DNA of 64,000 bases, taken from IMG/VR virus record IMGVR_UViG_3300030329_004647, positions 1 through 64,000 of that record. One strand, 5' to 3'. The notes beneath the pieces are model-generated. The model searched no databases. It worked only from the letters and a program-made list of their open reading frames with translations, and was not told the DNA's origin. The position numbers and the translations under genes are program-made. Below are positions 12,782 through 39,119 of the stretch, piece by piece (the first letter of the stretch is position 1; each line of letters starts with the position of its first letter).

Positions 12782-12966
12782 ATTTCGTCGGACACCATTC
12801 TTTGTTTGTATATCGCTTTTTGTTTCATTTCTCTAAGTCTGTCTGATTTTTTGGTAAAAGCCTTTTTATCTCTTAGAGTTTTTAATTGTTTTGTCAATTT
12901 TACTTTTCTTCTAAGTGTTTTTAAGGCTCTGTTTAAATTATTTTTTTCTATTTTAACTATTAACAT
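12778..12966 (-). CDS. rpsU: ribosomal protein bS21 homologue
   Basis: MLIVKIEKNNLNRALKTLRRKV...FTKKSDRLREMKQKAIY fits the Bacteroidota bS21 pattern; 62 aa, very basic. Confidence 0.85.
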   Translation of the reverse strand: MLIVKIEKNNLNRALKTLRRKVKLTKQLKTLRDKKAFTKKSDRLREMKQKAIYKQRMVSDEI

Positions 12967-23300: not shown

Positions 23301-23572
23301 ACGTTAATAAAACAGCTACAGTTTTACTTAGAGGTTTTGTTAGAATTGATAGTACTTTATGGAATGGAACAACAGCTAACAGTAGTAGAGGTTCACAAGT
23401 TTATGTTTCTCCAGACGCTAATGGTGAATGGACTAATGATGTGTCTGATTTTGATACAACTAACGATGTAATGCGTGGAATGGGTAATTTAATTGTAAGA
23501 GACCCTAGTTCACCTAATGATTATTTTATTTGGTTTAATCCAGACCAAAACTATATTAAAATTCAAGCTTAA
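20387..23572 (+). CDS. putative tail fibre / receptor-binding protein with NTAxG beta-helix-type repeats
   Basis: many NxAxG/NTxxG repeats, VGIGTxxP motifs; C-terminal domain paralogous to 35344. Confidence 0.7.
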   Translation: MGNYGYLRYAPELLRRTFSYLEFCSGCVFESDIDYTTFSGTAMGLYSSGFTPCDKQAIDYTTFYILDLVNASITGSTFDNEYWTGNSGNIIASSTTVTNVGIGTVSPNTKLTVNGVVSSTTSMAAHNFVSTGASNPSAGYTFNSLYLRFQTAYTSTYIGFSVPSGFDTNSTKNTVVGHGAMGNATLNTATDNTGLGYRTFYDITSGDRNVAIGKTASYNLTSGGDNVHVGANAGFTSSVGNYNVFIGSAAGYYSDGVGTNANTAVGRNAMLNSKAGKHNTTMGHNSMYGNGAFPGGTGNTAMGSNSLSAIRDGKYNTTIGFDAGDSITTGSGNTTLGAGAGDNIVNGSHNIAIGSGTTILDGSESWRLNIGNIIYGRDLSSINSINAVGIGTQDPTNRLHVVGHEEEDNPLRLETLSTGRGNIVVADAQGVLYKSQTSSGHTAGFWTAATGVISNSGLTGNSVAVGTNSPNSLFEVKDYITFYTGSSEANTFIGYHSGMNYNDDMEKNVGIGHQVMALAAKTTGINAPQENTAVGYHSLKHITQGKLNTAIGTDSLQELTTGQYNVGIGAGAGSGVTTQEYNIAIGSLTLRNMDGTAAGRPARHNIAIGHNSQTYNPLGVFNTCVGGFTLGNTFGNAGGSGNTVMGYGALKTQGGNYNVAIGLEVGRAVTVGSGNTLLGYKVADNLTTGNHNIIIGYDIDAVEIDTDNSLNIGKAIYGTGIGSYGAKIGINTTTPNIVGLQVAGDISGSTISANTSVYAQETMTAQTIASVTTLSAMGDTHTHGDIYVDEDKKIYFDSTDTYIYANTNTFENLLIGADNNIILEPDNDLTIKVGGTQYARFFGAEKKVRIGTTSSTSPIAELEVVGTVSADTAIINDKVGIATGTPMTALHVVNDYGNGIGTPDWGLDEGQGGGEVLKYGRFNSAITAEGLIVMLVNSGGTSAWYKADARNPADTRIAHLVGVALDTYDSGDVNKTATVLLRGFVRIDSTLWNGTTANSSRGSQVYVSPDANGEWTNDVSDFDTTNDVMRGMGNLIVRDPSSPNDYFIWFNPDQNYIKIQA

Positions 23573-25598: not shown

Positions 25599-25979
25599 AT
25601 GAAAACAAAAACTGCTGGAATACTTGTAATATGTAAAGAAAACTCAAAACTTTTTTTAGTGAAAAGAGCTCCACATCATTTTTATCATGCCAATGAATGG
25701 TCCATACCATCAGGACATTTAGATGATGGTGAAAAATACAAAGAAGCTGCGATAAGAGAACTTAAAGAAGAGACACAAATAGAAAATGTTGAAGACATAT
25801 CTTTTTTAGGTGCATTAGAAAATGAAGAAAGAAGGTTTGAAATTTTTAAAGGATACGTTCCTAATGAAATCAATCCAGTATTAGACCATGAACACACCGA
25901 TTACGGTTGGTACTCTATATATAATATTCCTTCACCCATGGGACAAAGTTTAAAAAAAGTAATACAAAGAGCTTTGTAA
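25599..25979 (+). CDS. NUDIX hydrolase
   Basis: Nudix box GHLDDGEKYKEAAIRELKEETQI. Confidence 0.92.
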   Translation: MKTKTAGILVICKENSKLFLVKRAPHHFYHANEWSIPSGHLDDGEKYKEAAIRELKEETQIENVEDISFLGALENEERRFEIFKGYVPNEINPVLDHEHTDYGWYSIYNIPSPMGQSLKKVIQRAL

Positions 25980-26045: not shown

Positions 26046-29000
26046 ATGCGAAATTTTCTATTAATTATATTATGTTTTATATCGTTTGGAGTTGTAGCAC
26101 AGAACGATTCGTGGTTAAACCTACAAATCCAATTTGATAACTATCCTGAAGAATTAGACTGGAAATTATTTCAATTAGACACTTTAGCACCGAACAATAT
26201 TCTTGTCGCAGAGGGCGGACCTTACTACTCAACACCAAACCAACATTTACTTAATGTTTTTATACCTAACTTACATTCTAATGAAACTTACATATTAGAA
26301 GTCCATGACTCATTTGGGGACGGGTTAAGTTGGCCTAATAATGGGTATGTTTATTTGTCTAATATTTGTACGGACACCATATCATATGTGGAGGGAGACT
26401 TTGGTCCTTTTTTTACAGACACATTAACTGTTTCACCATGTAATTCCCCACCATTAGGTTGTCCAGATACATTAGCACTTAACTACGATTCTCTTGCGCA
26501 ATACACAGACATGAGTGTATGTACTTATCCTCCTTGTACTTCAGGTTTAGACACTCTATATGTTGAACCTATATGTGATAATGGGGTTTCAAAATTATAC
26601 TGGCAGTGGTCAGACCAAACAGATACAAATCCTAATTGTGGGATTATCGGTTATTATAGAGGAACAGACCTAAATAACCTCCCTTTTTATCCTTGGCCAA
26701 GTAACTGGCCCCAAGGAGGATTAACAACAACTATTAACCAAACATCACAAGGACAAATGCATTATTTTTATGCGATGTTAGGTGATTCTACTTTAACTGA
26801 CACTCTATCCATAATGCCTATACAATGCATATTAGGATGTACCGACCCTACAGCGATGAATTATAATCCATGGGCAAATGAAGATGACGGTAACTGTCAA
26901 AGCGCACAAGGAAGTTGTAATTACGGAGAAACATGTGTGAGAGTAATAGTAACACCAGATTCTTATGGAGAAGAAACTTATTGGTCACTAACCGATACTA
27001 TTACAGGAACCGTATTAGGTTCTGTGAATCCTGGTTTCTACTCAACACCAGGAGTTCCAGTAACCACTAATGTATGTGCACCTGAAAATTCAGTATTAGA
27101 ATTTACATTAAACGACCAATATGGAGACGGTATGTGTGGAACTTGTTGGGGTGGAATAGATGGTTCGGTGTTAGTAGAAGCTTGTGGTGATACTATAGCA
27201 CACATTGGACCTCCTACACCTATGGATTTTGGAAGTGATACAACGTTTGTTGCGGTTCCAGCACCAGTGTGTACAACAACAGGACCTACAGTAGGTTGTA
27301 TGGACCCAGGTTATGTCGAATACCTCCCAACAGCAACACAACAAAATCCAGGAGATTGTGTAACACCCGTTCAGTTGGGTTGTGTTGACCCAATGGCTTT
27401 TAATTATGACTCCACAGCCAATCAACAACTTATAACACCTAGCTGTACTTATACGTTAAGGTTATTAGATGGTGCTGGTGATGGATGGTTCGGTTCTTGG
27501 ATAGGAATCACACAAGGAGATTCTATTATTGGTGATTTTACTATGACACAAGGAGACACTCTAGACATTCCAATAGTATTAGACGCAATAAAACCAGCAA
27601 AAATATATTTCTTTACACTAGGAAATTCAGTATCAACAGCTAGTCAATGTGGTGTTCAACTAATAAACCCAATGGGACAAGTTACATTTTACGCTGGTTC
27701 TAATCCATGGACAGACCCTATTATTCCATTTCCTTTTATATACACCACAATTCAAGATTGTGGAAACAGTTGTGTACCTACAATTCCAGGATGTATGGAT
27801 TCTACCGCATACAATTATAATCCAGGAGCAAATGTACCAGATACAGTGTTTCCGTGTTTTTACAATCCAGGGTGTATAAGTCCTGCTTATTTAGAATACC
27901 ATACTTATTTAGATTCTGTTGGTGTTGCTCCAGATTTTCTGGACCCATTTTCTTGTCAGAACCTTGCAATTTTTGGTTGTATGGACTCAACTCAATTTAA
28001 TTACGACCAATATGCTACTGTTAATTGGACTTCCGCGACCGATTCATCAGACCCGTGTGTCCCTATGATATATGGTTGTACAGACGCCACAGCTTTAAAT
28101 TATGACCCATTGGCTAATACAGAAAATTATACGTGTATACTACCAATATATGGGTGTACGGATTCAACAGCTTTTAATTTTAACCCATTAGCGAATACAA
28201 ATAATGGAACTTGTATTGCTGTAATAGAAGGGTGTACTGACCCTACAGCTATGAATTATAATCCTAACGCTAATACAGATGATTTTAGTTGTATAGCTTA
28301 CATTTACGGTTGTACCGACTCCACGATGTGGAATTATAATCCATTAGCAAACACAGATAACGGAACCTGTGAACCTTTTGTTTATGGTTGTACGGATGTT
28401 ATAGCAGCTAACTTTGACCCATTAGCAAACACAAATAACAATACATGTTATTATAATCCAGGTTGTACCGACCCACTTTATGTAGAATTTTATAATCAAG
28501 GATTTACCGCTGACTTTGACGATGGTAGTTGTTTGACCCTAGTTGTATATGGTTGTACCGATAACACTATGTTTAATTATGACCCAACCGCAAATGTAGA
28601 TAATGGTAGTTGTGAACCTTTTGTGTATGGGTGTATAGACTCTACTATGTTTAACTATGACCCATTAGCTAACACGGATAATGGTACGTGTGTACCTTTT
28701 ATTTACGGGTGTATGGACGCCACAATGTTTAATTACGACCCATTAGCCAATACAAATCAAGTGAGTGAAACAGATATCTCCAACCCATGTATACCAATTA
28801 TATATGGATGTACCGACTCAACAGCATTTAATTATGACCCTTATGCAAATACAGATAACGGAACTTGTGAAGCAGTGGTATACGGATGTACAGATGAATA
28901 CGATTTTCCAGCATACCTAGATTCAACTTATATAAATTATTTACCAGGATTTTCAACGGTTACCACTTACAATGTTGATGTCACAGCAAATACAGACGAC

Positions 29001-29417
29001 GGGAGTTGTCTATATTATGATGAAAATAGTGTAACAGGACCAGGTACACCTTATTGGTTAAATGATTCATGTTACGCTTGGGTAGTATATGATGTTGACC
29101 CATACTGTATGACAAATCAATGGGATGCTTTTTGTCAATCACAATATGATTATTGTGAATTTGGAACACCAATTGGATTAAATGAAATGACACGTGACCA
29201 AGTTTTGATTTTTCCTAATCCAACTAATGACTTAGTAACTATTAGGTCTAAAGAATCAGTAGATGTAAATATTTATGACTTCTTAGGTAATTTAATATTT
29301 GAATTAAAATCAATACAAGAAGAAAAGGTGGACCTGCGACCTTATTCTTCCGGTATTTATAATATACAACTTACTTACAAAGGTATAATTATAAATCATA
29401 AAGTAGTTAAACAATGA
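26046..29417 (+). CDS. T9SS-secreted Cys-repeat protein
   Basis: Sec signal peptide; about 18 GCxDxxAxNYxPxA..C repeats; C-terminal IFPNPTN..IYDFLGN..SGIYNI..KVVKQ sorting domain. Confidence 0.88.
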   Translation: MRNFLLIILCFISFGVVAQNDSWLNLQIQFDNYPEELDWKLFQLDTLAPNNILVAEGGPYYSTPNQHLLNVFIPNLHSNETYILEVHDSFGDGLSWPNNGYVYLSNICTDTISYVEGDFGPFFTDTLTVSPCNSPPLGCPDTLALNYDSLAQYTDMSVCTYPPCTSGLDTLYVEPICDNGVSKLYWQWSDQTDTNPNCGIIGYYRGTDLNNLPFYPWPSNWPQGGLTTTINQTSQGQMHYFYAMLGDSTLTDTLSIMPIQCILGCTDPTAMNYNPWANEDDGNCQSAQGSCNYGETCVRVIVTPDSYGEETYWSLTDTITGTVLGSVNPGFYSTPGVPVTTNVCAPENSVLEFTLNDQYGDGMCGTCWGGIDGSVLVEACGDTIAHIGPPTPMDFGSDTTFVAVPAPVCTTTGPTVGCMDPGYVEYLPTATQQNPGDCVTPVQLGCVDPMAFNYDSTANQQLITPSCTYTLRLLDGAGDGWFGSWIGITQGDSIIGDFTMTQGDTLDIPIVLDAIKPAKIYFFTLGNSVSTASQCGVQLINPMGQVTFYAGSNPWTDPIIPFPFIYTTIQDCGNSCVPTIPGCMDSTAYNYNPGANVPDTVFPCFYNPGCISPAYLEYHTYLDSVGVAPDFLDPFSCQNLAIFGCMDSTQFNYDQYATVNWTSATDSSDPCVPMIYGCTDATALNYDPLANTENYTCILPIYGCTDSTAFNFNPLANTNNGTCIAVIEGCTDPTAMNYNPNANTDDFSCIAYIYGCTDSTMWNYNPLANTDNGTCEPFVYGCTDVIAANFDPLANTNNNTCYYNPGCTDPLYVEFYNQGFTADFDDGSCLTLVVYGCTDNTMFNYDPTANVDNGSCEPFVYGCIDSTMFNYDPLANTDNGTCVPFIYGCMDATMFNYDPLANTNQVSETDISNPCIPIIYGCTDSTAFNYDPYANTDNGTCEAVVYGCTDEYDFPAYLDSTYINYLPGFSTVTTYNVDVTANTDDGSCLYYDENSVTGPGTPYWLNDSCYAWVVYDVDPYCMTNQWDAFCQSQYDYCEFGTPIGLNEMTRDQVLIFPNPTNDLVTIRSKESVDVNIYDFLGNLIFELKSIQEEKVDLRPYSSGIYNIQLTYKGIIINHKVVKQ

Positions 29418-30016
29418 GACACATAAACACATTTGTAAAAGCTAACCTCACAGTAGTTTACTTAGGAATATTATTAATATTTTTTGCACTGATGTTAACT
29501 GCTTGTGAAAAAGACCCAATAGAACCCTATAATCCTCCTGAGGCTATTAATCCAGATGAAATAAAAGGCAATTGGGAAATAACTAACTTTTATTTATTAG
29601 AGGAAGGGTTTAGAATTGATTTATCTGCGTGGGTAGTATATGTAAATGATTCTGTAGCAGATATAGGTACTATAATCTTTAATGACGAAGGAAACGCAAA
29701 TTTTGATTTGATATATGGTACCAGAGCAGAAGGTTATGACTCCCAAATGAGATGGGGAGATAACTTTAATTCCGCTTTACAAGACAGTTCTACTTTAGGT
29801 TGGAACTGGAGAGCTGAAAAACCTTTGTGTAACACCACTGAGTATAATTATGATTATAACCCAGCACAATATTTTTTAGGAATGAACTTAGAAGATTGGA
29901 CTACAACTTATAAAACAGAAAATAAATGGATAATTGAAAATACAAGACATTATAATGATGAATTAGAATTGACGGGAGAACACTTCCAGTACCGTCGTTT
30001 AACTTTAGAAAGATAA
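29414..30016 (+). CDS. lipoprotein, lipocalin-like
   Basis: lipobox LTA|C EKD; IKGNWEIT motif. Confidence 0.75.
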   Translation: MRHINTFVKANLTVVYLGILLIFFALMLTACEKDPIEPYNPPEAINPDEIKGNWEITNFYLLEEGFRIDLSAWVVYVNDSVADIGTIIFNDEGNANFDLIYGTRAEGYDSQMRWGDNFNSALQDSSTLGWNWRAEKPLCNTTEYNYDYNPAQYFLGMNLEDWTTTYKTENKWIIENTRHYNDELELTGEHFQYRRLTLER

Positions 30017-30020
30017 ATTT

Positions 30021-30407
30021 ATGACAACTACAAAAACACAAGGATTTTTACAAAAAATTGACCCACAAATGTGGTTAACTTTAATAGGCTTTGTATTCAC
30101 CCTAGGACTTATTTATGGAGAGTTTCAACAAATGAAAAATCAAATACAAATATTTGAAGAAAAACAAAAACTTTTTGATGAAGATTTTGAGAATGAAACC
30201 AAAATGGTACTTGAAAAATTTGAAACATTAGAAGAAAAACTACAACTTGAAATTGAAACGGTAGAACAAAGATTAGATAAAAAGATTAAAACAATAAATA
30301 CTCTAGAAGATAAAGTATTTGATATTACAAAAGAAATAGATGTTGAGTTTAAGAAAATAGAAATGCAAATAAAAAATTTAGGAGGCCATGATATAACTAA
30401 AGAATAA
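30021..30407 (+). CDS. membrane-anchored coiled-coil protein
   Basis: TM WLTLIGFVFTLGLIY then heptads. Confidence 0.7.
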   Translation: MTTTKTQGFLQKIDPQMWLTLIGFVFTLGLIYGEFQQMKNQIQIFEEKQKLFDEDFENETKMVLEKFETLEEKLQLEIETVEQRLDKKIKTINTLEDKVFDITKEIDVEFKKIEMQIKNLGGHDITKE

Positions 30408-30408
30408 T

Positions 30409-31521
30409 ATGAAAAATATACTTTTAATATTAACTCTATTACCACTTCTTTCTTTTGGACAAACAGACTCACTTAATTTACAACTTAAACAGGATTGGTT
30501 TAAAACCAACGTATTTGATGGGCTAGAGATTTATTTAGCGGGTAGTTATGGTAGACCTAATGATTTTTCTGACCAAACACTATTAGATGATTATGGATTT
30601 ACTATAGGTTTTAAGAAAAAAGCTAGTGAACTGTGTATAACTTGTCCAAAAAATGAATTTGGTAGAAAAGATGAAGAATTAAAAGCAGATGAAGATAAAG
30701 AATCATATGCTTTTAATAAACAAGGTTTAGAGTATAGAATTACCTGGAGTTATTTTAGAGACGATAATAAACCCTTTAAAGAAGACAGACAGTCTGTTAG
30801 ATACACTAAATTATTTAAAAAATGGGGTGTATGGGCTGAAGTAGACCATAGAAATACTATTTTTGATGATATTTCAGAATCAGGGTCCAATCAAGAATAT
30901 GTAAAAGGAGGTATAAGATTATTATTTAGAGCAACAGATTGGTTAAATATTACTGGTGGGGTAAATGCTAGAACAAACCCATTCGTATCATATACTAATG
31001 AGTTTATTAATTGGTATGAGGGAGCTTCTTGGGATACTGAGTCGTCTGCACAAAACGTATTTTATGATTTTAATGGTGATGGTAGTTGGGAAGATACAGA
31101 ATTAGTAGGTACTTACACAGAAATATTAGACCCTGTGTTAAATGAACCTTATGTTACAAATGCATATAATGCAAAAAAAGAAATTTGGGTTGCATCATCA
31201 TCACCTGTAATAGGTTTAGATATTCTTACCGAATCAAGCATCTACTTTTTTAATTTATTTGTTAACATTTATCCTTACCCTTATGATGTCATCACACCTG
31301 AAGTTGAATATGTTTACTCTGGTAATGACGTGGAATTAAAAGCATTTGGTATGGAAGCTGATTGGGCTCCTACTGAATCAATTACAGAATTTGATGCTGG
31401 GTTAGTTATAGGTTTAAAACTTGGTAAAAACTTTTCCGCTGAATTAAACGGAGAAATATCTAATTACTATGGAGTCTATAACTACAGGACTCAAATTGGA
31501 TTAAAATACAAATTAAAGTAA
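30409..31521 (+). CDS. putative outer-membrane beta-barrel protein
   Basis: signal peptide MKNILLILTLLPLLSFG; alternating beta-strand pattern; C-terminal YRTQIGLKYKLK. Confidence 0.65.
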   Translation: MKNILLILTLLPLLSFGQTDSLNLQLKQDWFKTNVFDGLEIYLAGSYGRPNDFSDQTLLDDYGFTIGFKKKASELCITCPKNEFGRKDEELKADEDKESYAFNKQGLEYRITWSYFRDDNKPFKEDRQSVRYTKLFKKWGVWAEVDHRNTIFDDISESGSNQEYVKGGIRLLFRATDWLNITGGVNARTNPFVSYTNEFINWYEGASWDTESSAQNVFYDFNGDGSWEDTELVGTYTEILDPVLNEPYVTNAYNAKKEIWVASSSPVIGLDILTESSIYFFNLFVNIYPYPYDVITPEVEYVYSGNDVELKAFGMEADWAPTESITEFDAGLVIGLKLGKNFSAELNGEISNYYGVYNYRTQIGLKYKLK

Positions 31522-31522
31522 A

Positions 31523-33928
31523 ATGCAAATCAACAAGTATCCCACCGCGACCATCTTTGGTGTATATATTCTATTTCTATTATTTCTACTATTCAACTCA
31601 ACACAATTAGTAGCTCAAACTATAACCATACAAGACCAACAAACCTTAGAACCCATCCCCTTTGCGAATATTTCGTCCTACCAGTTGTTAATAACAGAAA
31701 CAGCTAATGGGTTTGTTACAGATTCAGTTAGGGTTGGTACAACAACAGACATCAATGGTCATGCTGATATTTCAGACTGGTCCGATGATATGTTACTACA
31801 TATATCATTTCTTGGTTATGAAAAAAGAAAGATAACTAAAGGAGAGATATTAAAAAAGAATAATGTTATTTTCTTAAGAGAGACCGCACAGTTTTTAGAA
31901 CAAGTGGTAATATCTGCTAGTAAGTTTAGAGAAAAAAGAGAAGATGTGGCTTATTCTATAGAATCTTTAGATAGAAAAACCATAGAAAACGCAAATGTAA
32001 CACAAACTCCAGACCTTCTTACAAAAACTAATGGAGTAACAATTCAAAAGTCACAATTAGGTGGAGGTTCCCCAATCATAAGAGGATTTGAAGCTAATAG
32101 AGTTCTATTAGTAGTTGATGGTGTTAGAATGAATAACGCGATTTATCGTTCTGGTCACTTACAAAATTCTTTAACAATTGACCCTAATGCAGTAGAAATA
32201 GTGGAAGTGGTATTTGGTCCTTCATCCACGATTTATGGGAGTGATGCGTTAGGAGGGGTAATACATTTTTATACACGTAAACCACAATTTAGTAAGAATG
32301 ATAAAATATTTACCCAAACAAAGGTTGTGAGTCGTATGTCTCTTGCTGATGAAGGAATGTCTACTCATATAGATTATAACATAGGAGGTAAAAATGTTGC
32401 TAATTTTACCAGTTTAACATATACTAGTTTTGGGGATTTGAGGATGGGTCAAAACAGAAATCATGGGTATGATGATTGGGGGTTGGCAAACTATTACATT
32501 AACGAGAACGACGAAATGGTGGAAAATGAGAATTCTCATATACAAGTAGGTACAGGTTATGAACAATATGATTTACTTAATAATCTTACATGGAAAGCAA
32601 CTCCAGAAATAATTTTAAGATGGAACACCCAACTATCCACTACTACAAATATACCTAGATATGATAACCTACAAGATTATAATGATGGTGAGTTAAAATG
32701 GAGTGAATGGCACTACGGACCTCAGACTAGATTTTTTACTTCACTACAAGGTAATGTATATAAACAAACTAAATTTTATGATAATTTTAGAGTAACATCC
32801 GCATATCAATTCATTAAAGAGGATAGAATAACAAGAAAGTATCAATCAGAGGATTATAATAACACATATGTAGATGTACACGTATCCAGTATTAATTTTG
32901 ACCTTTCAAAGAAAAAACTTTTATACGGGTTTGAGTTTGTTAATAACCAAGTAATATCTACCTCAACGGCAGGAACTCAACCAAGATATCCTTCAGGTGG
33001 AAGTGACTTAACATCAATCGCAGCTTATACAACATATAAACATCACTTTTCAGAAAAATTCTTAATTGCGGGTGGGTTAAGATATTCTTCCATATTTGCA
33101 AACATGTCTTTTAACAATGATGACCCTGTATTTGTTACTGATGAAATAAATGCAACAAACGGCGCACTTACGGGAAATATAAATAGTGTTTGGAAACCAG
33201 GGAATGGGTGGAAATTCGATGTTGTTGGAAGTACAGGTTTTAGAAGTCCAAACATTGATGACTACGGTAAAGTCTTTGTTAAAAGAGGTGACATGGTTAT
33301 CCCTAATCCAGACCTTACACCAGAATATGCTTATAATACAGAAGGTACTTTGACTAAAACTTGGTCCAACATATCCTTAGCTGGAACAATATATAATACA
33401 TGGTTAAGAGATGCTATCACCAAACAAGATTTAGGGTATAGTCAAATACATGAAGACGAAGAAGTAAATGTGCAAACCCTGATGAATACTGAGGAAGCCT
33501 ATGTTAGAGGTATTTCTTTAGTTGGGAAATACGAACCAGTAGAAGAACTTTATTTTGAATCCTCATTTAACCTACAAAAAGGATATGATATATCAAATGA
33601 TGAACCTCTTGGTCATATTCCACCCGCATATGGTAAATTTTTAACTAGATTTAAACTTAAAAAATTTGAAGGAAGGGTTTGGTACGATTACGCTTTACCT
33701 AAATTATTAGAGAATTCTAATGGGGCGACGGACAATATTGATTTAGCGACTGATGAAGGTTGGCCTTTTTGGTATACACTTAATTTAAGTATGACCTATA
33801 ATATAAACAAAGGTCTTACAATGCAAATAGGGTTGGAAAATTTAATGGACCTACACTATAGAACATTCGCTTCTGGTCTTTCAGCACCAGGAAGAAATGT
33901 GATAATAAAAGCACAATATAAATTTTAA
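31523..33928 (+). CDS. TonB-dependent receptor (Bacteroidota type, N-terminal CarboxypepD_reg-like domain)
   Basis: EQVVISAS, GGGSPIIRGFEANRVLLVVDGVRMNN, FGPSSTIYGSDALGGVI, FRSPNIDD, C-terminal PGRNVIIKAQYKF. Confidence 0.95.
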   Translation: MQINKYPTATIFGVYILFLLFLLFNSTQLVAQTITIQDQQTLEPIPFANISSYQLLITETANGFVTDSVRVGTTTDINGHADISDWSDDMLLHISFLGYEKRKITKGEILKKNNVIFLRETAQFLEQVVISASKFREKREDVAYSIESLDRKTIENANVTQTPDLLTKTNGVTIQKSQLGGGSPIIRGFEANRVLLVVDGVRMNNAIYRSGHLQNSLTIDPNAVEIVEVVFGPSSTIYGSDALGGVIHFYTRKPQFSKNDKIFTQTKVVSRMSLADEGMSTHIDYNIGGKNVANFTSLTYTSFGDLRMGQNRNHGYDDWGLANYYINENDEMVENENSHIQVGTGYEQYDLLNNLTWKATPEIILRWNTQLSTTTNIPRYDNLQDYNDGELKWSEWHYGPQTRFFTSLQGNVYKQTKFYDNFRVTSAYQFIKEDRITRKYQSEDYNNTYVDVHVSSINFDLSKKKLLYGFEFVNNQVISTSTAGTQPRYPSGGSDLTSIAAYTTYKHHFSEKFLIAGGLRYSSIFANMSFNNDDPVFVTDEINATNGALTGNINSVWKPGNGWKFDVVGSTGFRSPNIDDYGKVFVKRGDMVIPNPDLTPEYAYNTEGTLTKTWSNISLAGTIYNTWLRDAITKQDLGYSQIHEDEEVNVQTLMNTEEAYVRGISLVGKYEPVEELYFESSFNLQKGYDISNDEPLGHIPPAYGKFLTRFKLKKFEGRVWYDYALPKLLENSNGATDNIDLATDEGWPFWYTLNLSMTYNINKGLTMQIGLENLMDLHYRTFASGLSAPGRNVIIKAQYKF

Positions 33929-33933
33929 AAATA

Positions 33934-34107
33934 ATGAATTGGAATAAAATTGGACTTAAAGTAATGGATTACTTGAAAGACTATGGACATCACGCACTTC
34001 TATTATTCGCTGGTTGGGAGTTAAAATCAGCTGATTGGATGGTGTTTGCTTGTTCTATCACAATCTGGGCACTTGTTAACGAAGTTAGAAAGTATACTAG
34101 AAATTAA
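33934..34107 (+). CDS. small membrane protein (57 aa, not in ORF track)
   Basis: MNWNKIGLKVMDYLKDYGHHALLLFAGWE...; similar to 34133. Confidence 0.6.
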   Translation: MNWNKIGLKVMDYLKDYGHHALLLFAGWELKSADWMVFACSITIWALVNEVRKYTRN

Positions 34108-34110
34108 TAA

Positions 34111-34118
34111 TATTTATA
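34111..34118 (+). promoter_or_regulatory. TATTTATA motif (putative late promoter)
   Basis: upstream of ATG 34133. Confidence 0.5.
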
Positions 34119-34132
34119 ATAAAAATAAAAAA

Positions 34133-34321
34133 ATGGATACAGTATTAAATTATATCAAAAATTATGCAGGACACTTACTATTATTTGGTTACACTTGTGA
34201 AGTTATAAGTGGTGACCATTTAGTCGCACAAGCTTTACTATTAGGATGGATAGTATGGAGAGAGTGGAGATGTAAATGTTCAGCTTGTAAAGGAGATAGT
34301 ACGTGTTGTAAAAGTAAATAA
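34133..34321 (+). CDS. small membrane protein with Cys-rich tail (start moved to MDTVL)
   Basis: VLNYIKNYAGHLLLF...CKCSAC..CC. Confidence 0.6.
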   Translation: MDTVLNYIKNYAGHLLLFGYTCEVISGDHLVAQALLLGWIVWREWRCKCSACKGDSTCCKSK

Positions 34322-34324
34322 ATT

Positions 34325-34513
34325 ATGACTATAGCTAGAATTATTATCACTATGGGGGTTCTAGCAATATTTGCATGGTTAGTTTACCTTATATTTTTTG
34401 AGGAGGTTACGGGTACCACTCGTGACCTTCTTTTTATTTTGGTAGGTGGATTCCTCAGTTCATTCCAAAATATAATAGACTATTGGTTTAAAAAAGAAAA
34501 AAAACATGTCTAA
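34325..34513 (+). CDS. 2-TM holin-like protein
   Basis: two TM helices, RDLLFILVGG...IIDYWF, basic C-terminus. Confidence 0.5.
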   Translation: MTIARIIITMGVLAIFAWLVYLIFFEEVTGTTRDLLFILVGGFLSSFQNIIDYWFKKEKKHV

Positions 34514-35343: not shown

Positions 35344-37386
35344 ATGGCAGATTTATCCAATCTTAAAATATCAAGTACCTTTCCAAGAGTCTTACAAAGA
35401 GACCCTGACACTGGTCAGTTACAAAACTTGGTGGGAAATAAACCAACTAATCTTATTATTCAAGATACTACATTAAGATATGTAGATGGTAATCAACAAA
35501 ACAATTATATATTAACATCTGACGCTGATGGTAATGCAAGATGGGCAGTTAATTCTGGTGGTGGAGGAAGTACCGATATCTATTGGTCAGCAAATACCAC
35601 AAACACCACACCTAGTATAACACCATCTGGGACTAGTGTAGCTACACCTATTTTAGTTAAGAATGACATAAGTGGAGCTACTGATTTATATTTAGGTAAT
35701 TCTACCGCTAATGTTGTAGATACCTATACAGCTTCTACTATTTCTGCTTATGATAAACTAACAATTAAGGGAAGACGTGTTGACAATGATTTTATAGTAT
35801 TACAACAGGATGAAGTTAAATTGTTTCTGGATGGAACGGAATCAATAGTGTTTAGAAGTGGCACTCACCCTAGTGGGAGTGCTGACTACATTTTTAATTC
35901 TGCTAGCCAAGATATTGATTTCGCGATTAATGGACCTACAAATACAAACTTCAAAGTCAGTGTTTCGAGAGATGCTATAAGGATGAAAGACCACGTAACA
36001 GTTGGAGGAGCATCTTTTGTTTCTTGGAATAATATGGAAAATTGGGGACTTGCGGTAACAGGAACATCATACTTAGTATCAGGAGGAACCAACGGATTAG
36101 ATAAAAACGCGATAACAACGAGTGGTAATACTCACATACACGGTTCACTTAGTGCCAACACAAATGTTACTGTAGATGGAACTCTATCCGCTAACACCAT
36201 CTCAAGTAAGAATATAAATGAATCAATTCTAACAATCCAATCTGATGAGGTAAAAATAGCAAGTCACGGTGGAAGTCCTGAATATCTAAATATTAAAGAT
36301 GATGTTATTAAATTTTATATTGATAATTCAGAAGCGGTTACCTTTGACAAGTCAAACTCACAATATCTCTTTAACGCTGCTCAACAAGATTACGATTTTG
36401 TAATTGGTGGAAGTACAGGAATTAACACATTCCAGGTAGACGTAAGTGCGAACCTAGCTAGATTTAGAGACCACCTAACAATAGGTACTTCTCTTGGTAT
36501 ATCCAGCCAAATAGGGATAAGGTTTGGATTATCAGTAACTGGAACTTCTTATTTAATTTCAGGTGGTACTCAAGGTGCTGATAAAAACGCAATAACAACA
36601 AGTGGAAATACACATATACATGGTGTGATGAGTGCTAATACCGCTGCATATGCACCTTTCTTAACGACAGACTATGTTATAGCAAATTCGTCAAATGGTC
36701 TGTGGTTAAAAGAAGACGGTGGTAGAGGTATAGAAATTCAAGATGGAGGAAATATTGCAATTGGTGGTACAGGACAAAACGCCAATGAACAATTAACAGT
36801 TAGTGCGGGAATATCTGGAGTTACCGTTTATTCCAAAACTGATATGTACGCGGGAGTTACAGGTAGAATGAGTGGTGGTACAGTAGTAGCTGCTACGAGT
36901 TTATCAGCGATGAGTGAGACAACCATAGACGGTAATCTTAATTTAAATGGTTATGTAAAATATAAACAACCCGCATTTTTGGATAATAATGCTGGTTCAG
37001 GAGAAATAGCATATTTTGGTATTGCACAAGGAGGTTCAACCACTAAAGGAAAATTATACTATCTCCAAACAAATGGTGCTTGGGATGAAGTTCAGGCAAA
37101 TGCTTCTAGTAATGATGGTAATAGTCAATTATTAGGTATTGCTCTAGGTTCCACACCAGCTTCTAATGGAATGTTGTTAAGAGGGTTTTTTGATATGAAT
37201 AGTCATTTTACTGGTACTTTTGATGAGGGAATACCAGTATATATTGATGATAATAACTCGGGTTACATAACAGTCACCCAACCAGCTGGAAACAATGAAT
37301 TTGTTAGAGTAGTAGGATATTGTACCAATACCGCAAACGTTATTTATTTTAATCCAGATGGAACTTACATAACAGTGAACGCGTAA
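35344..37386 (+). CDS. putative tail fibre / structural protein with internal duplication
   Basis: two copies of ...GLxVTGTSYLxSGGTxGxDKNAITTSGNTHIHG; C-terminal domain paralogous to 20387. Confidence 0.7.
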   Translation: MADLSNLKISSTFPRVLQRDPDTGQLQNLVGNKPTNLIIQDTTLRYVDGNQQNNYILTSDADGNARWAVNSGGGGSTDIYWSANTTNTTPSITPSGTSVATPILVKNDISGATDLYLGNSTANVVDTYTASTISAYDKLTIKGRRVDNDFIVLQQDEVKLFLDGTESIVFRSGTHPSGSADYIFNSASQDIDFAINGPTNTNFKVSVSRDAIRMKDHVTVGGASFVSWNNMENWGLAVTGTSYLVSGGTNGLDKNAITTSGNTHIHGSLSANTNVTVDGTLSANTISSKNINESILTIQSDEVKIASHGGSPEYLNIKDDVIKFYIDNSEAVTFDKSNSQYLFNAAQQDYDFVIGGSTGINTFQVDVSANLARFRDHLTIGTSLGISSQIGIRFGLSVTGTSYLISGGTQGADKNAITTSGNTHIHGVMSANTAAYAPFLTTDYVIANSSNGLWLKEDGGRGIEIQDGGNIAIGGTGQNANEQLTVSAGISGVTVYSKTDMYAGVTGRMSGGTVVAATSLSAMSETTIDGNLNLNGYVKYKQPAFLDNNAGSGEIAYFGIAQGGSTTKGKLYYLQTNGAWDEVQANASSNDGNSQLLGIALGSTPASNGMLLRGFFDMNSHFTGTFDEGIPVYIDDNNSGYITVTQPAGNNEFVRVVGYCTNTANVIYFNPDGTYITVNA

Positions 37387-38396: not shown

Positions 38397-39119
38397 ATGA
38401 AAGAAGTTTGTATATTAGGAGACGGCCAATTAGGAAAAGAAATACAAGAACAAACAGGATGGAAATGTATTTCTCGTAAAAAAGATGGTTTTGACATAAC
38501 CAAACCCGAAGAATGGGATAAACATTTATTAAAAGTAGAGTTTGGTGCAATCCAACATTGTCCTTATAGTGTTATTGTAAATTGTATAGCAGATACAGAT
38601 ACATACTCAAATAAGAGAGATTCCCATTGGAATATAAATTATAAAGGAGTTGATGACTTAGTAGAATTTTGTAATAAATGGAAAATTAAATTAATACACA
38701 TATCTACTGATTATCTTTATGGTGGAGGTCTACCCAATAAAACAGAAAATGAGGTCCCATCTCATTGTGAAAACTGGTATAGTTATACTAAATTATTGGG
38801 AGACGCTCACGTACAACTAAAATCTAAAAATTATTTAGTAATACGATGTTCTTTTAAACCTTCCCCTTTTCCTTTTGAAAAAGCTTTTAATGATGTAACT
38901 GGAAACTTTGACTATACCGATAAAATTGCTAAATTAATTATTAAACTTATAACTAATAAAGCAACAGGAATATTTAATGTTGGTACAGAAGCTAAAACAT
39001 TATATGAATTGGCTATTAAAACTAATCCAAAAGTCCTCCCAACCACTAGGAGAGGAACACCTTTCCCTAATTCCGTGTTAATGAACATATCAAAAATGAA
39101 AAATTTCTTGAAAATTTAG
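38397..39119 (+). CDS. rmlD: dTDP-4-dehydrorhamnose reductase-like SDR
   Basis: ILGDGQLGKEI, IVNCIA, KLIHISTDYLY, YSYTK (YxxxK), YLVIR. Confidence 0.8.
   Translation: MKEVCILGDGQLGKEIQEQTGWKCISRKKDGFDITKPEEWDKHLLKVEFGAIQHCPYSVIVNCIADTDTYSNKRDSHWNINYKGVDDLVEFCNKWKIKLIHISTDYLYGGGLPNKTENEVPSHCENWYSYTKLLGDAHVQLKSKNYLVIRCSFKPSPFPFEKAFNDVTGNFDYTDKIAKLIIKLITNKATGIFNVGTEAKTLYELAIKTNPKVLPTTRRGTPFPNSVLMNISKMKNFLKI

What the first reader, a model, noticed from the sequence alone, without database searches (positions are those of the whole stretch)
29414..33928. Complete outer-membrane remodelling operon: lipoprotein, coiled-coil, beta-barrel and intact TonB-dependent receptor
Seen: tightly coupled genes (-4 to +4 nt spacing) downstream of the T9SS cargo and a TATTTATC phage-type motif. 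The 801-aa TBDR is intact from plug to terminal Phe. Established: TBDRs import iron, heme, B12 or glycans and are common phage receptors. Inference: the phage installs its own nutrient importer (plug motifs resemble Bacteroidota heme/iron receptors) or a decoy receptor. The whole cassette may assemble one surface complex.
Basis: partly seen in the sequence, partly recalled or inferred. Interest (0 to 1): 0.75.

Follow-up and report, generated by a model that had tools for sequence, protein, structure and literature searches.

The report
Phage-borne TonB receptor envelope module
A large marine phage of uncultured Flavobacteriales carries a conserved five-gene block that builds cell-envelope proteins; its centre is an intact copy of its host's own single-copy TonB-dependent outer-membrane receptor, fitted with a phage-specific periplasmic front domain.

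Summary
Four ORFs sit -4 to +1 nt apart downstream of a T9SS-cargo gene. They encode a lipoprotein, a membrane-anchored helical protein, a probable ~12-strand barrel and an intact 801-aa TonB-dependent receptor (TBDR). The TATTTATC motif occurs at chance frequency. The contig is a real jumbo phage: terminase, portal and capsid genes lie elsewhere on its 232 kb. Misassembly is unlikely, because the identical TBDR with the same neighbours was assembled on at least 23 contigs, and three more distant phage contigs keep the module. All four genes are under purifying selection (dN/dS about 0.06-0.14). The TBDR belongs to a single-copy Bacteroidota orthogroup. Its nearest relatives are chromosomal genes of marine Flavobacteriales at a conserved PorZ-RecO-TBDR locus. 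One host gene has a plug and barrel nested inside a phage clade (78% identity), but its N-terminal extension is only 34% identical. Phages therefore share their own version of that periplasmic domain. The lipoprotein and barrel have no detectable bacterial relatives. My best reading is that the phage supplies a transport-competent copy of a host receptor, with phage-specific periplasmic coupling and accessory envelope proteins. The heme or iron assignment is weak, and a complex among the proteins is untested. Phage-encoded TBDRs are already reported, so this is a new variant of a known kind.

The parts
26046..29417 (+). T9SS cargo protein, 1123 aa: signal peptide, Cys-containing repeats (GCTDxTAxNYNPxAN...C) and a type-A C-terminal sorting domain. 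It is a conserved first gene of the module.
   Evidence: Por_Secre_tail E 3e-10. Homologous along its length (42-76% identity) to the gene at the same position in L016, L010 and L013. The repeats are shared at 51-57% identity with several large proteins of the candidate-host MAGs.
29414..30016 (+). Lipoprotein, 200 aa (P0001): signal peptide, LTAC lipobox, invariant C-E-K-E/D-P after the lipidated Cys, beta-rich mature part of about 169 aa.
   Evidence: 79 homologue clusters, all at 50% identity or more and none on a contig longer than 298 kb. AlphaFold2 confidence is low (pLDDT 53). ESM Atlas features are nearest to Bacteroidota lipocalin-like/DUF5004 lipoproteins, which is a lead only. dN/dS 0.11-0.14.
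30021..30407 (+). Membrane-anchored helical protein, 128 aa (P0002): one N-terminal transmembrane helix, then about 90 charged, probably coiled-coil residues predicted to face the periplasm. It is the most conserved gene of the module.
   Evidence: 82-88% identity to L016, L010 and L013. dN/dS 0.07-0.08. No Pfam, PHROG or NCBIfam family. Atlas neighbours are unnamed viral clusters.
30409..31521 (+). Probable outer-membrane beta-barrel, 370 aa (P0003): signal peptide, about 12 strands, invariant CxTCP motif (C76, C79) and a highly conserved long loop (about residues 208-250). Orphan family.
   Evidence: A profile search of 1.84 billion representatives found only its own family. Homologues occur only on phage-type contigs. 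dN/dS 0.06-0.08.
31523..33928 (+). TonB-dependent receptor, 801 aa (P0004), intact.
31616..31894 (+). N-terminal extension of the TBDR (residues 32-124, CarbopepD_reg-like). This is the phage-specific part of the protein.
   Evidence: Pfam PF13715. NTE against plug+barrel identity is 58% vs 63% between phage subclades and 81% vs 83% within one, but 34% vs 78% between phage and host P0064 (Fisher p 6e-15). In the NTE-only tree all phage sequences form one clade (93/90).
31895..31924 (+). TonB box region (LEQVVISASK, residues 125-134).
   Evidence: Conserved across phage and bacterial orthologues in the alignment.
31937..32260 (+). Plug domain (residues 139-246); its core is nearly invariant.
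   Evidence: Mean identity is 1.00 among phage sequences for residues 181-200.
32531..33844 (+). The TBDR barrel region matched by Pfam (residues 337-774). FRSP and NPDL boxes lie at residues 573-598 with no His between them. The protein ends in Phe at residue 801.
33934..34513 (+). Three small membrane-protein ORFs (33934-34107, 57 aa; 34133-34321, 62 aa; 34325-34513, 62 aa). Their position after the TBDR is conserved; the first two look paralogous. Whether they belong to the module is uncertain.
   Evidence: Small ORFs of similar size follow the TBDR in L016 and L010. No terminator-like structure follows the TBDR.

Best explanation
The window belongs to a jumbo phage of uncultured marine Flavobacteriales. 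During infection the phage expresses a five-gene envelope module. Its core is a transport-competent copy of the host lineage's own single-copy TonB-dependent receptor. I infer that this copy is inserted into the host outer membrane by the host BAM machinery and energised through its conserved TonB box. It would then keep up or raise uptake of whatever the host orthologue imports while host gene expression fails. That substrate is unproven; iron-class is the best guess. The phage version differs from the host version mainly in its periplasmic N-terminal extension. This domain is conserved among phages and unlike the hosts' domain. It therefore probably sets a phage-specific periplasmic coupling, either to a particular TonB paralogue or to the phage's own membrane-anchored helical protein. 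The plug and barrel remain exchangeable with host alleles. The lipoprotein, the orphan barrel and the T9SS-secreted repeat protein are phage-specific envelope proteins made alongside it. Shown: gene integrity, phage residence, conservation, purifying selection, orthology to a host gene, and the domain mosaic. Inferred: membrane insertion, transport, substrate, partners and timing of expression.
For: Phage identity: TerL, portal and major head genes on the same contig; IMG/VR virus record, 72% complete. Not an assembly artefact: the identical TBDR was read on 24 contigs, 23 of them with the same neighbours, including Tara Oceans assemblies. The module is syntenic in L016, L010 and L013. Purifying selection on all four genes, dN/dS 0.06-0.14. 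Transport features are conserved: TonB box, an invariant plug core and a C-terminal Phe. Origin: phage TBDRs and chromosomal TBDRs of marine Flavobacteriales form one 100/100 clade, and the host genes sit at a conserved PorZ-RecO-TBDR-DUF4837 locus. The orthogroup is single-copy and sharply bounded in Bacteroidota: 41 of 151 genomes match at 288 bits or more, and the rest have nothing at E 1e-30. Domain mosaic. In SusC the NTE is essential and has been proposed to set TonB-paralogue specificity (PMC7782687). The phage encodes no TonB of its own. A marine metatranscriptome holds a 633-nt contig with 1 mismatch that bridges the P0002/P0003 junction. Precedent: TBDR genes in Mar_Mega_1 (PMC9723777) and in Lak phages, where they are transcribed (bioRxiv 10.64898/2026.10.24.761521); also phrog_5687.
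Against: The substrate is unidentified. The match to heme receptors is below the family cut-off and lacks the His between the FRxP and NPxL boxes. The bacterial orthologues have no conserved substrate-handling neighbour. Uptake does not explain why a T9SS cargo gene, an orphan barrel and an inner-membrane helical protein are conserved next to the TBDR. The complex prediction gave no answer. The RNA evidence is one contig, and DNA carry-over is not excluded. The NTE is more divergent than the barrel among bacteria too, so part of the NTE contrast reflects a generally fast-evolving domain. The AU test on the NTE alone cannot reject P0064 grouping with phage clade 2 (p 0.14).
Confidence: 0.42

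Rival explanations
1. T9SS-linked module. The TBDR orthogroup is the counterpart of PorF (P. gingivalis PG0534), a TBDR-like outer-membrane protein needed for normal type IX secretion. On this reading the phage module exists to secrete, anchor or display the phage's own T9SS cargo protein on the infected cell, and the barrel and lipoprotein serve as anchor or attachment parts.
For: A homologous T9SS cargo gene heads the module in all four phage loci. Host orthologues lie next to porZ in four contigs. BNR/Sortilin-type proteins lie beside the bacterial orthologue in three lineages, and the one in L014 carries a T9SS sorting domain. All 41 orthologue-bearing genomes have SprA. PorF is a predicted TBDR of about 92 kDa, with orthologues named in F. 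johnsoniae and C. hutchinsonii; the latter co-precipitates with PorV (PMC5445135, PMC8564354, PMC12704123). A TBDT can act in protein secretion, as Oar does (PMC6434023). The cargo repeats mimic host surface proteins.
Against: Orthology to PG0534, Fjoh_0118 or CHU_1606 could not be tested, because no sequence was available through the tools. 79 of 120 SprA-positive genomes lack the orthogroup. The co-occurrence is confounded by phylogeny. P0003 matches no PorP/SprF, PorV or PorQ model. Type-A cargo is not known to need a dedicated barrel (my own knowledge).
Confidence: 0.2
2. Receptor management or superinfection exclusion. The host orthologue is the adsorption receptor of this or competing phages. 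The module changes the receptor landscape: the lipoprotein blocks the receptor, as T5 Llp blocks FhuA and lambda Lom blocks LamB, and the phage TBDR stands in for the blocked function or acts as a decoy.
For: The module lies between tail-spike-like (20387-23572) and tail-fibre-like (35344-37386) genes. A lipoprotein is encoded with the TBDR. The phage and host alleles have been exchanged. The survey of outer-membrane proteins in huge phages discusses this idea.
Against: The TonB box and plug are under strong constraint, which a decoy would not need. From about residue 160 to 700, the host P0064 plug and barrel fall within phage clade 2 diversity. The phage-specific part is the periplasmic NTE, which an incoming phage cannot see. 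Extra receptor copies would trap progeny virions. No homology to Llp, Cor or Lom was found.
Confidence: 0.15
3. The lipoprotein and the membrane-anchored helical protein form a two-component spanin, and the small membrane proteins downstream are holin-like. The block would then be partly a lysis cluster, and the TBDR an unrelated neighbouring auxiliary gene.
For: P0002 has the i-spanin layout: an N-terminal transmembrane helix followed by a periplasmic helical domain. P0001 is an outer-membrane lipoprotein. Three small membrane ORFs follow the TBDR. In L016 a Phage_lysozyme gene lies about 2 kb downstream. There is a weak Atlas lead to Mu releasin.
Against: The gene order is lipoprotein first and not overlapping or embedded. 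The mature lipoprotein is 169 aa and beta-rich, unlike short proline-rich o-spanins (my own knowledge). P0002 has no Cys. No lysozyme gene was found in this record. A barrel and a TBDR sit between these genes and the small ORFs. No PHROG lysis family matched.
Confidence: 0.1
4. Host contamination or a chimeric assembly: the TBDR block is bacterial DNA wrongly joined to a phage contig.
For: The TBDR has close bacterial relatives at 50-56% identity to the window's copy.
Against: At least 23 contigs carry the identical TBDR with the same neighbours. Synteny holds in three more divergent phage contigs. GC content is uniform. The flanking genes are phage-type. The accessory genes occur only on phage-type contigs. 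The bacterial homologues sit in an entirely different, housekeeping context.
Confidence: 0.01

Closest known systems
TBDR genes of megaphages and huge phages: Mar_Mega_1 'SusC-like' (PMC9723777); Lak phage 22-stranded TBDR and the survey of 1,603 huge-phage outer-membrane proteins (bioRxiv 10.64898/2026.10.24.761521); PHROG 5687
   Same: A full-length TBDR encoded by a very large phage of Bacteroidota. Function unproven; read as an auxiliary or envelope-modifying gene. The window's TBDR matches phrog_5687 at E 8e-46 over residues 122-801.
   Different: No close relative was found in deposited phage genomes: tblastn gave at most about 30% identity over the N-terminal third. Here the TBDR is the last gene of a conserved five-gene module, with a T9SS cargo, a lipoprotein, a membrane-anchored helical protein and an orphan barrel. 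It can be traced to a specific single-copy host orthogroup, and it carries a phage-specific N-terminal extension.
Chromosomal recO-linked TBDR orthogroup of Bacteroidota; nearest members in marine Flavobacteriales MAGs (P0064-P0067, L017, L018)
   Same: Same domain order, length, TonB box, plug core, FRxP/NPxL boxes and C-terminal Phe. 50-56% identical to the window's protein, and 75-78% between P0064 and phage clade 2.
   Different: The bacterial genes sit among housekeeping genes without the lipoprotein, helical protein or barrel. Their N-terminal extension is unlike the phage one.
Heme/hemoglobin TBDRs (TIGR01785; PhuR 8THE, ShuA 3FHH, HmuR with HmuY)
   Same: Best-scoring curated subfamily and best solved-structure matches. 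An upstream lipoprotein recalls hmuY-hmuR.
   Different: The score is below the curated cut-off. The PDB matches cover only the plug. There is no His between the FRxP and NPxL boxes. The lipoprotein shows no HmuY similarity.
PorF (PG0534) of the type IX secretion system
   Same: A TBDR-like outer-membrane protein of about 800 aa, inherited vertically in T9SS-bearing Bacteroidota (PMC7323717, PMC5445135). The host orthologue lies beside porZ, and T9SS cargo genes lie beside both the phage and some bacterial copies.
   Different: Orthology was not tested. The orthogroup was found in only 41 of 120 SprA-positive genomes sampled.
T5 Llp/FhuA and lambda Lom/LamB (phage outer-membrane proteins that mask receptors)
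   Same: Phage-encoded outer-membrane lipoprotein or barrel made during infection; here the genes lie near tail-fibre genes.
   Different: No sequence similarity. Here the phage encodes the receptor-type protein itself, with its transport motifs intact.
SusC N-terminal extension (Pfam PF13715; BT1763, PMC7782687)
   Same: The same domain family precedes the TonB box. In SusC it is essential and of unknown function, and has been proposed to select among TonB paralogues.
   Different: The protein here is not SusC-type: there is no SusD partner and no SusC/RagA model among the NCBIfam matches. The new point here is that phages keep their own conserved version of this domain.

Membership tests
TonB-dependent receptor (Pfam Plug + TonB_dep_Rec_b-barrel) | N-terminal plug domain | tested here: met
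   PF07715 E 1.2e-23, residues 139-246, above the cut-off.
TonB-dependent receptor (Pfam Plug + TonB_dep_Rec_b-barrel) | Full-length 22-strand-type barrel domain | tested here: met
   PF00593 E 2.5e-22, profile positions 12-436 of 436. TIGR01785 aligns over positions 1-677 of 677. The strand count itself was not modelled.
TonB-dependent receptor (Pfam Plug + TonB_dep_Rec_b-barrel) | TonB box ahead of the plug, signal peptide, C-terminal aromatic residue | tested here: met
   LEQVVISASK at residues 125-134, conserved in phage and bacterial orthologues; terminal F. Binding to TonB was not tested.
Heme/hemoglobin TBDR subfamily (TIGR01785) | Score above the curated family cut-off | tested here: not met
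   209.1 bits against a cut-off of 316.85.
Heme/hemoglobin TBDR subfamily (TIGR01785) | Conserved His between the FRAP and NPNL boxes (feature recalled from my own knowledge of HemR/HmuR work) | tested here: not met
   GFRSPNIDDYGKVFVKRGDMVIPNPDL contains no His. The same holds across the whole orthogroup.
Heme/hemoglobin TBDR subfamily (TIGR01785) | Neighbouring heme-handling genes (HmuY-type hemophore, heme ABC transporter or oxygenase) | tested here: not met
   None in the phage module or beside 28 bacterial orthologues. PepSY_TM proteins lie beside two of them.
SusC/RagA-type TBDR with a SusD partner | SusC/RagA family model match and an adjacent SusD-like lipoprotein | tested here: not met
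   No SusC/RagA model among the 22 NCBIfam matches. The adjacent genes show no SusD family match.
PorF (T9SS TBDR-like outer-membrane protein) | Orthology to PG0534, Fjoh_0118 or CHU_1606 | not testable with these tools
   No tool gave access to these sequences, and the library has no PorF model.
PorF (T9SS TBDR-like outer-membrane protein) | Occurs only in T9SS-bearing genomes and lies near T9SS genes | tested here: inconclusive
   41 of 41 orthologue-bearing genomes have SprA, but 79 SprA-positive genomes lack the orthologue. porZ is adjacent in four host contigs.
Two-component spanin (for P0002 and P0001) | i-spanin: N-terminal transmembrane helix plus periplasmic coiled coil | tested here: inconclusive
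   The layout fits by inspection. No spanin family matched, and the protein has no Cys.
Two-component spanin (for P0002 and P0001) | o-spanin: short outer-membrane lipoprotein encoded within or just after the i-spanin gene | tested here: not met
   A lipobox is present, but the mature protein is 169 aa and beta-rich, and its gene lies upstream of P0002.
T9SS barrel families PorP/SprF, PorQ, PorV (for P0003) | Match to the family models | tested here: not met
   No Pfam, NCBIfam or PHROG match. The profile search found only its own family.
Outer-membrane beta-barrel fold (for P0003) | Signal peptide and a closed antiparallel barrel | tested here: inconclusive
   Signal peptide present. The model has pLDDT 66 and about 12 strands. 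Foldseek E is 1e-9 to autotransporter, OmpG and NanC barrels, but TM is below 0.5. The C terminus is ...KYKLK, which is not a canonical aromatic end.
T9SS type-A cargo (for the 1123-aa protein) | C-terminal Por_Secre_tail domain and an N-terminal signal peptide | tested here: met
   PF18962 at residues 1055-1119, 40.7 bits against a cut-off of 27. The N terminus is MRNFLLIILCFISFGVVAQ.

The most novel reading that the evidence does not exclude
The module builds a phage-controlled trans-envelope device. The phage-specific N-terminal extension of the TBDR would dock on the phage's own inner-membrane-anchored helical protein (P0002), instead of or alongside a host TonB. A host-type plug and barrel would thereby be rewired into a channel under phage control. 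That channel would either import a nutrient or, with the orphan barrel and lipoprotein, export and display the T9SS repeat protein. The plug and barrel would be replaced by recombination with whichever host lineage the phage infects, while the phage keeps its own coupling domain.
Probability: 0.12. Interest if true: 0.85.

Novelty: new variant of a known kind. Interest (0 to 1): 0.6.

Why it matters
TBDRs in phage genomes have so far been listed as curiosities or presumed nutrient-uptake genes. This case offers a tractable evolutionary handle. The phage gene is a copy of one identifiable, single-copy host gene. Its plug and barrel have been exchanged with a host allele, and phages keep a private version of the periplasmic N-terminal extension. 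That domain is essential in SusC-type transporters, yet its function is unknown. If the phage domain proves to select a partner, either a TonB paralogue or the phage helical protein, it would help explain what this widespread Bacteroidota domain does. It would also show how a virus takes over energised outer-membrane transport. The phage is widespread in ocean metagenomes, so any effect on uptake or on the surface of infected Flavobacteriales would bear on marine nutrient cycling. The close link to a host TBDR and to host-type surface repeats also gives a host-assignment clue for an uncultured phage lineage.

Tried and rejected
1. blastn of the block against deposited phage genomes found nothing. 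tblastn of the TBDR found only weak, partial hits, many in unannotated or contaminated records.

2. The search for related loci with the single protein found nothing in IMG/VR. With alignment A1 it found one 297-kb UViG.

3. The TATTTATC 'phage-type motif' is at chance frequency.

4. The AlphaFold2 model of the lipoprotein was too poor to search with (pLDDT 53).

5. The TBDR plus lipoprotein complex prediction scored 0.00. The tool says this is no evidence either way.

6. I compared the barrel and the lipoprotein with the BBP2 porins and the small protein that flank the Fluviicola orthologue. There was no significant similarity.

7. I compared the phage cargo with the T9SS cargo beside host P0064. 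They share only the sorting domain.

8. I looked for a conserved substrate-handling neighbour of the bacterial orthologues. There is none, apart from RecO in 6 loci and scattered PepSY_TM and BNR/Sortilin proteins.

9. The profile search for distant relatives of the barrel found only its own family.

10. The phage genome has no TonB_C, no second Plug, no second Por_Secre_tail, no Phage_lysozyme and no GlnA.

11. All-phage monophyly of the TBDR is rejected (AU 3e-13), but only because host P0064 nests in phage clade 2. Other clade tests were weak or not significant (p 0.019, 0.036, 0.14, 0.21). The groups were named after seeing a first tree.

12. The sigma-70 promoter scan gave fewer hits than the shuffles and is not informative for Bacteroidota.

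Full report
WHAT IS THERE. The window is the first 64 kb of a single 232,028-bp contig with 32% GC. The contig is held as an IMG/VR virus record, linear, with CheckV completeness of 72%. Outside the window it encodes a large terminase subunit, a portal and a major head protein. It also encodes ribonucleotide reductase, a Lon-like protease, a DNA ligase, a tail-spike-like protein and a peptidase/transglycosylase. It has a tmRNA gene but no tRNA genes. It is therefore a jumbo phage and not a bacterial fragment.

From residue 1 the 801-aa protein has these parts:
- a signal peptide;
- a CarbopepD_reg-like N-terminal extension (NTE);
- a TonB-box-like LEQVVISASK;
- a Plug domain;
- a full-length TonB-dependent barrel;
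- a terminal Phe.

The 200-aa protein is a lipoprotein with an LTAC lipobox and an invariant C-E-K-E/D-P after the lipidated Cys. The acidic residues after the Cys recall the Bacteroidota lipoprotein surface-export signal. That comparison comes from my own knowledge and was not tested. The 128-aa protein has one N-terminal transmembrane helix followed by about 90 charged helical residues. The 370-aa protein has a signal peptide. Its model is of moderate confidence, with about 12 long antiparallel strands, and its best structural matches are generic outer-membrane barrels. The TATTTATC motif is at chance frequency.

IS IT REALLY PHAGE DNA AND A REAL UNIT? GC content is uniform across the block. 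The identical TBDR was read on 24 contigs, 23 of them with the same neighbours; some come from Tara Oceans assemblies. Three more distant phage contigs keep the same order. They are L016 (49 kb, TBDR 78% identical), L010 (247.5 kb, 61%) and L013 (an IMG/VR UViG of 297.6 kb, 61%). L013 has two extra ORFs between the barrel and the TBDR.

The upstream T9SS cargo gene is homologous along its whole length in all four loci, at 42-76% identity. The conserved unit therefore has five genes: cargo, lipoprotein, helical protein, barrel and TBDR. Pairwise dN/dS within subclades is 0.06-0.14 for the four downstream genes. dS is near saturation, so these values are approximate, but they clearly indicate purifying selection. 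No terminator-like structure follows the TBDR, and three small membrane ORFs come next.

A marine metatranscriptome holds a 633-nt contig with one mismatch that spans the junction of the helical-protein and barrel genes. It also holds a short piece inside the TBDR. This hints at transcription but does not prove it, because DNA carry-over is not excluded.

WHERE THE GENES COME FROM. The lipoprotein and the barrel have homologues only at 50% identity or more, and none lies on a contig longer than 298 kb. A profile of the barrel family, searched against 1.84 billion representative proteins, found only its own family. These two genes are lineage-specific orphans. Language-model features place the lipoprotein near Bacteroidota lipocalin-like/DUF5004 lipoproteins. 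They place the barrel and the helical protein near unnamed viral clusters. These are leads only.

The TBDR is different. About 60 homologue clusters at 60-87% identity correspond to the phage lineage. Many of them share their longest contig with a cluster of the lipoprotein or barrel family. At 50-56% identity come chromosomal genes of uncultured marine Flavobacteriales. In four such contigs the gene sits in the same housekeeping context: PorZ, RecO (detected in L014 and L015), TBDR, DUF4837. More distant Bacteroidota homologues are about 30-42% identical.

I sampled 151 Bacteroidota genomes. Of these, 41 have a full-length match of at least 288 bits, and all but one have exactly one such match. 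The others have nothing at E 1e-30. The family is thus a sharply bounded, essentially single-copy orthogroup. Its neighbours are housekeeping genes: RecO in six loci, plus PolA, HolB and Fe-ADH. PepSY_TM proteins lie beside two orthologues and BNR/Sortilin-type proteins beside three.

In trees, the phage sequences and the near bacterial sequences form one clade with 100/100 support. Inside it, the window's subclade is sister to P0065-P0067 (99/97), and the bacterial P0064 falls within the second phage subclade. All-phage monophyly is rejected (AU 3e-13), but this is because of P0064. The other clade tests are weak, and I named the groups after seeing a first tree.

THE DOMAIN MOSAIC. From about residue 160 to 700, host P0064 is as similar to phage clade 2 members as they are to one another. 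Its first 120 or so residues are very different, although this stretch is well conserved among the phages. The identities for NTE (residues 32-124) against plug plus barrel (160-801) are:
- P0064 against phage P0022: 34% and 78% (Fisher p 6e-15);
- two clade 2 phages: 81% and 83%;
- clade 1 against clade 2 phage: 58% and 63%.

On the NTE alone all 20 phage sequences form one clade (93/90) that excludes P0064. With only 93 columns, however, the alternative grouping cannot be rejected (p 0.14). On plug plus barrel alone P0064 nests inside clade 2, and clade 2 is monophyletic without it in none of 200 bootstrap trees. The NTE is also the faster-evolving part among bacteria, so part of the contrast is general. 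What is special is that phages hold their own NTE as constant as the barrel.

The simplest reading is this. The plug and barrel have been exchanged between phage and host at least once. The nesting of P0064 favours a phage-to-host direction for that event. Each side kept its own periplasmic N-terminal domain. In SusC-type transporters this Pfam PF13715 domain precedes the TonB box and is essential. Its function is unknown, and it has been proposed to give specificity for TonB paralogues (PMC7782687).

HOW IT MOST LIKELY WORKS. The TonB box, the plug core (identity 1.00 among phages over residues 181-200) and the C-terminal Phe are conserved. The gene is under purifying selection, and the phage encodes no TonB of its own. 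I therefore favour a transport-competent receptor that host machinery inserts into the host outer membrane and that is energised through host TonB-ExbBD. This phage copy of a single-copy host receptor would keep up or raise uptake during a long jumbo-phage infection. The phage-specific NTE suggests that the periplasmic coupling is what the phage has customised. The most conserved gene of the module, the membrane-anchored periplasmic helical protein, is an obvious candidate partner. That link is inference only.

The substrate is unknown. The best curated family is TonB-hemin, but below its cut-off. The PDB matches to PhuR, Cir, ShuA and BtuB cover only the plug. The FRxP and NPxL boxes have no His between them, and there are no heme genes nearby. 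'Iron-class' is a guess supported only weakly, by family similarity and two PepSY_TM neighbours.

RIVALS.
1. A T9SS-linked reading. PorF (PG0534) is a TBDR-like protein needed for normal type IX secretion, and orthologues are reported across T9SS-bearing Bacteroidota (PMC5445135, PMC7323717, PMC8564354, PMC12704123). The module starts with a T9SS cargo gene. Host orthologues lie beside porZ. All 41 orthologue-bearing genomes have SprA. The cargo's Cys repeats are shared with several large proteins of the candidate-host MAGs. I could not test orthology to PorF, and 79 SprA-positive genomes lack the orthogroup.
2. Receptor masking or superinfection exclusion. The position between tail-spike-like and tail-fibre-like genes fits this idea. 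The conserved transport motifs and the periplasmic location of the phage-specific part do not.
3. A spanin pair formed by the helical protein and the lipoprotein, with holin-like small ORFs downstream. The layout fits in part, but gene order and lipoprotein size do not.
4. Contamination or chimeric assembly. This is effectively excluded.

COMPARISON WITH WHAT IS KNOWN, AND NOVELTY. Phage-encoded TBDRs have been reported in the marine megaphage Mar_Mega_1 (PMC9723777). They are also reported in Lak phages, where they are transcribed. [quoted passage not shown] PHROG 5687 collects such proteins. The bare finding is therefore not new.

Three points appear to be new, as far as my searches show:
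- the conserved five-gene module with two orphan envelope proteins and a T9SS cargo;
- the tracing of the TBDR to a specific recO-linked single-copy host orthogroup, with allele exchange between phage and host;
- the phage-specific N-terminal extension.

I rate it a new variant of a known kind, with interest 0.6.

LIMITS. No full-length TBDR model was made, so I could not map loops or periplasmic turns. Host identity rests on gene similarity only. Expression evidence is thin. Every mechanistic step beyond sequence features is inference.

Noticed in passing
window 12799-12957 (-): The phage encodes a ribosomal protein bS21 homologue (PF01165, 31.3 bits). The related contig L016 also has one close to the module. 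This fits the described bS21-encoding jumbo phages of Bacteroidota (PMC9723584).
   Followed up: partly
window 26046-29417: The T9SS cargo protein is built of repeated Cys-containing units (consensus about GCTDxTAxNYNPxANxDDGxC) with no Pfam family. The same repeat occurs at 51-57% identity in several large proteins of the two candidate-host Flavobacteriales MAGs (L046, L047).
   Followed up: partly
L014 10001-12322 (Tara scaffold, bacterial context): A chromosomal TBDR at the conserved PorZ-RecO locus has a plug and barrel nested within a phage clade (78% identity) but its own divergent N-terminal extension (34%). This suggests phage-to-host allele replacement of most of a core gene.
   Followed up: yes
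L013 5952-7804: In the 297-kb IMG/VR relative, two extra ORFs (432 aa, with a weak thioredoxin-like motif, and 184 aa) lie between the barrel gene and the TBDR. The module therefore tolerates insertions.
   Followed up: partly
window 33934-34321: The two small ORFs after the TBDR (57 and 62 aa) look like paralogues (shared Y.K.Y.GH.LLLF.G.E pattern), and the second ends in a Cys-rich tail. A third 62-aa membrane ORF follows. They may be holin-like or small membrane modulators.
   Followed up: no
genome C1 90124-90528 (-), outside the window: ARAGORN finds a tmRNA gene (tag GKTLAKLATLGLVREESAVTVA) but no tRNA genes in the whole 232 kb. That is unusual for a jumbo phage.
   Followed up: no
window 38397-39119 and 25599-25979: An RmlD/epimerase-like gene and a NUDIX hydrolase lie near the module. 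The former hints at modification of surface sugars in the same region of the genome.
   Followed up: no
window 30409-31521 (P0003 residues 76-80 and 208-250): The orphan barrel has an invariant C-x-T-C-P motif and its most conserved block (AQNVFYDFN.DG.W...ELVGTYTEIL.PVLNEPY) in a long loop with a DxNxDG-like stretch. These could be a metal-, calcium- or partner-binding site.
   Followed up: no
L016 21249-22316: A close relative of this phage carries a glutamine synthetase, as reported for 'moraphages' and other aquatic huge phages (PMC12619734). None was found in this 72%-complete record.
   Followed up: partly
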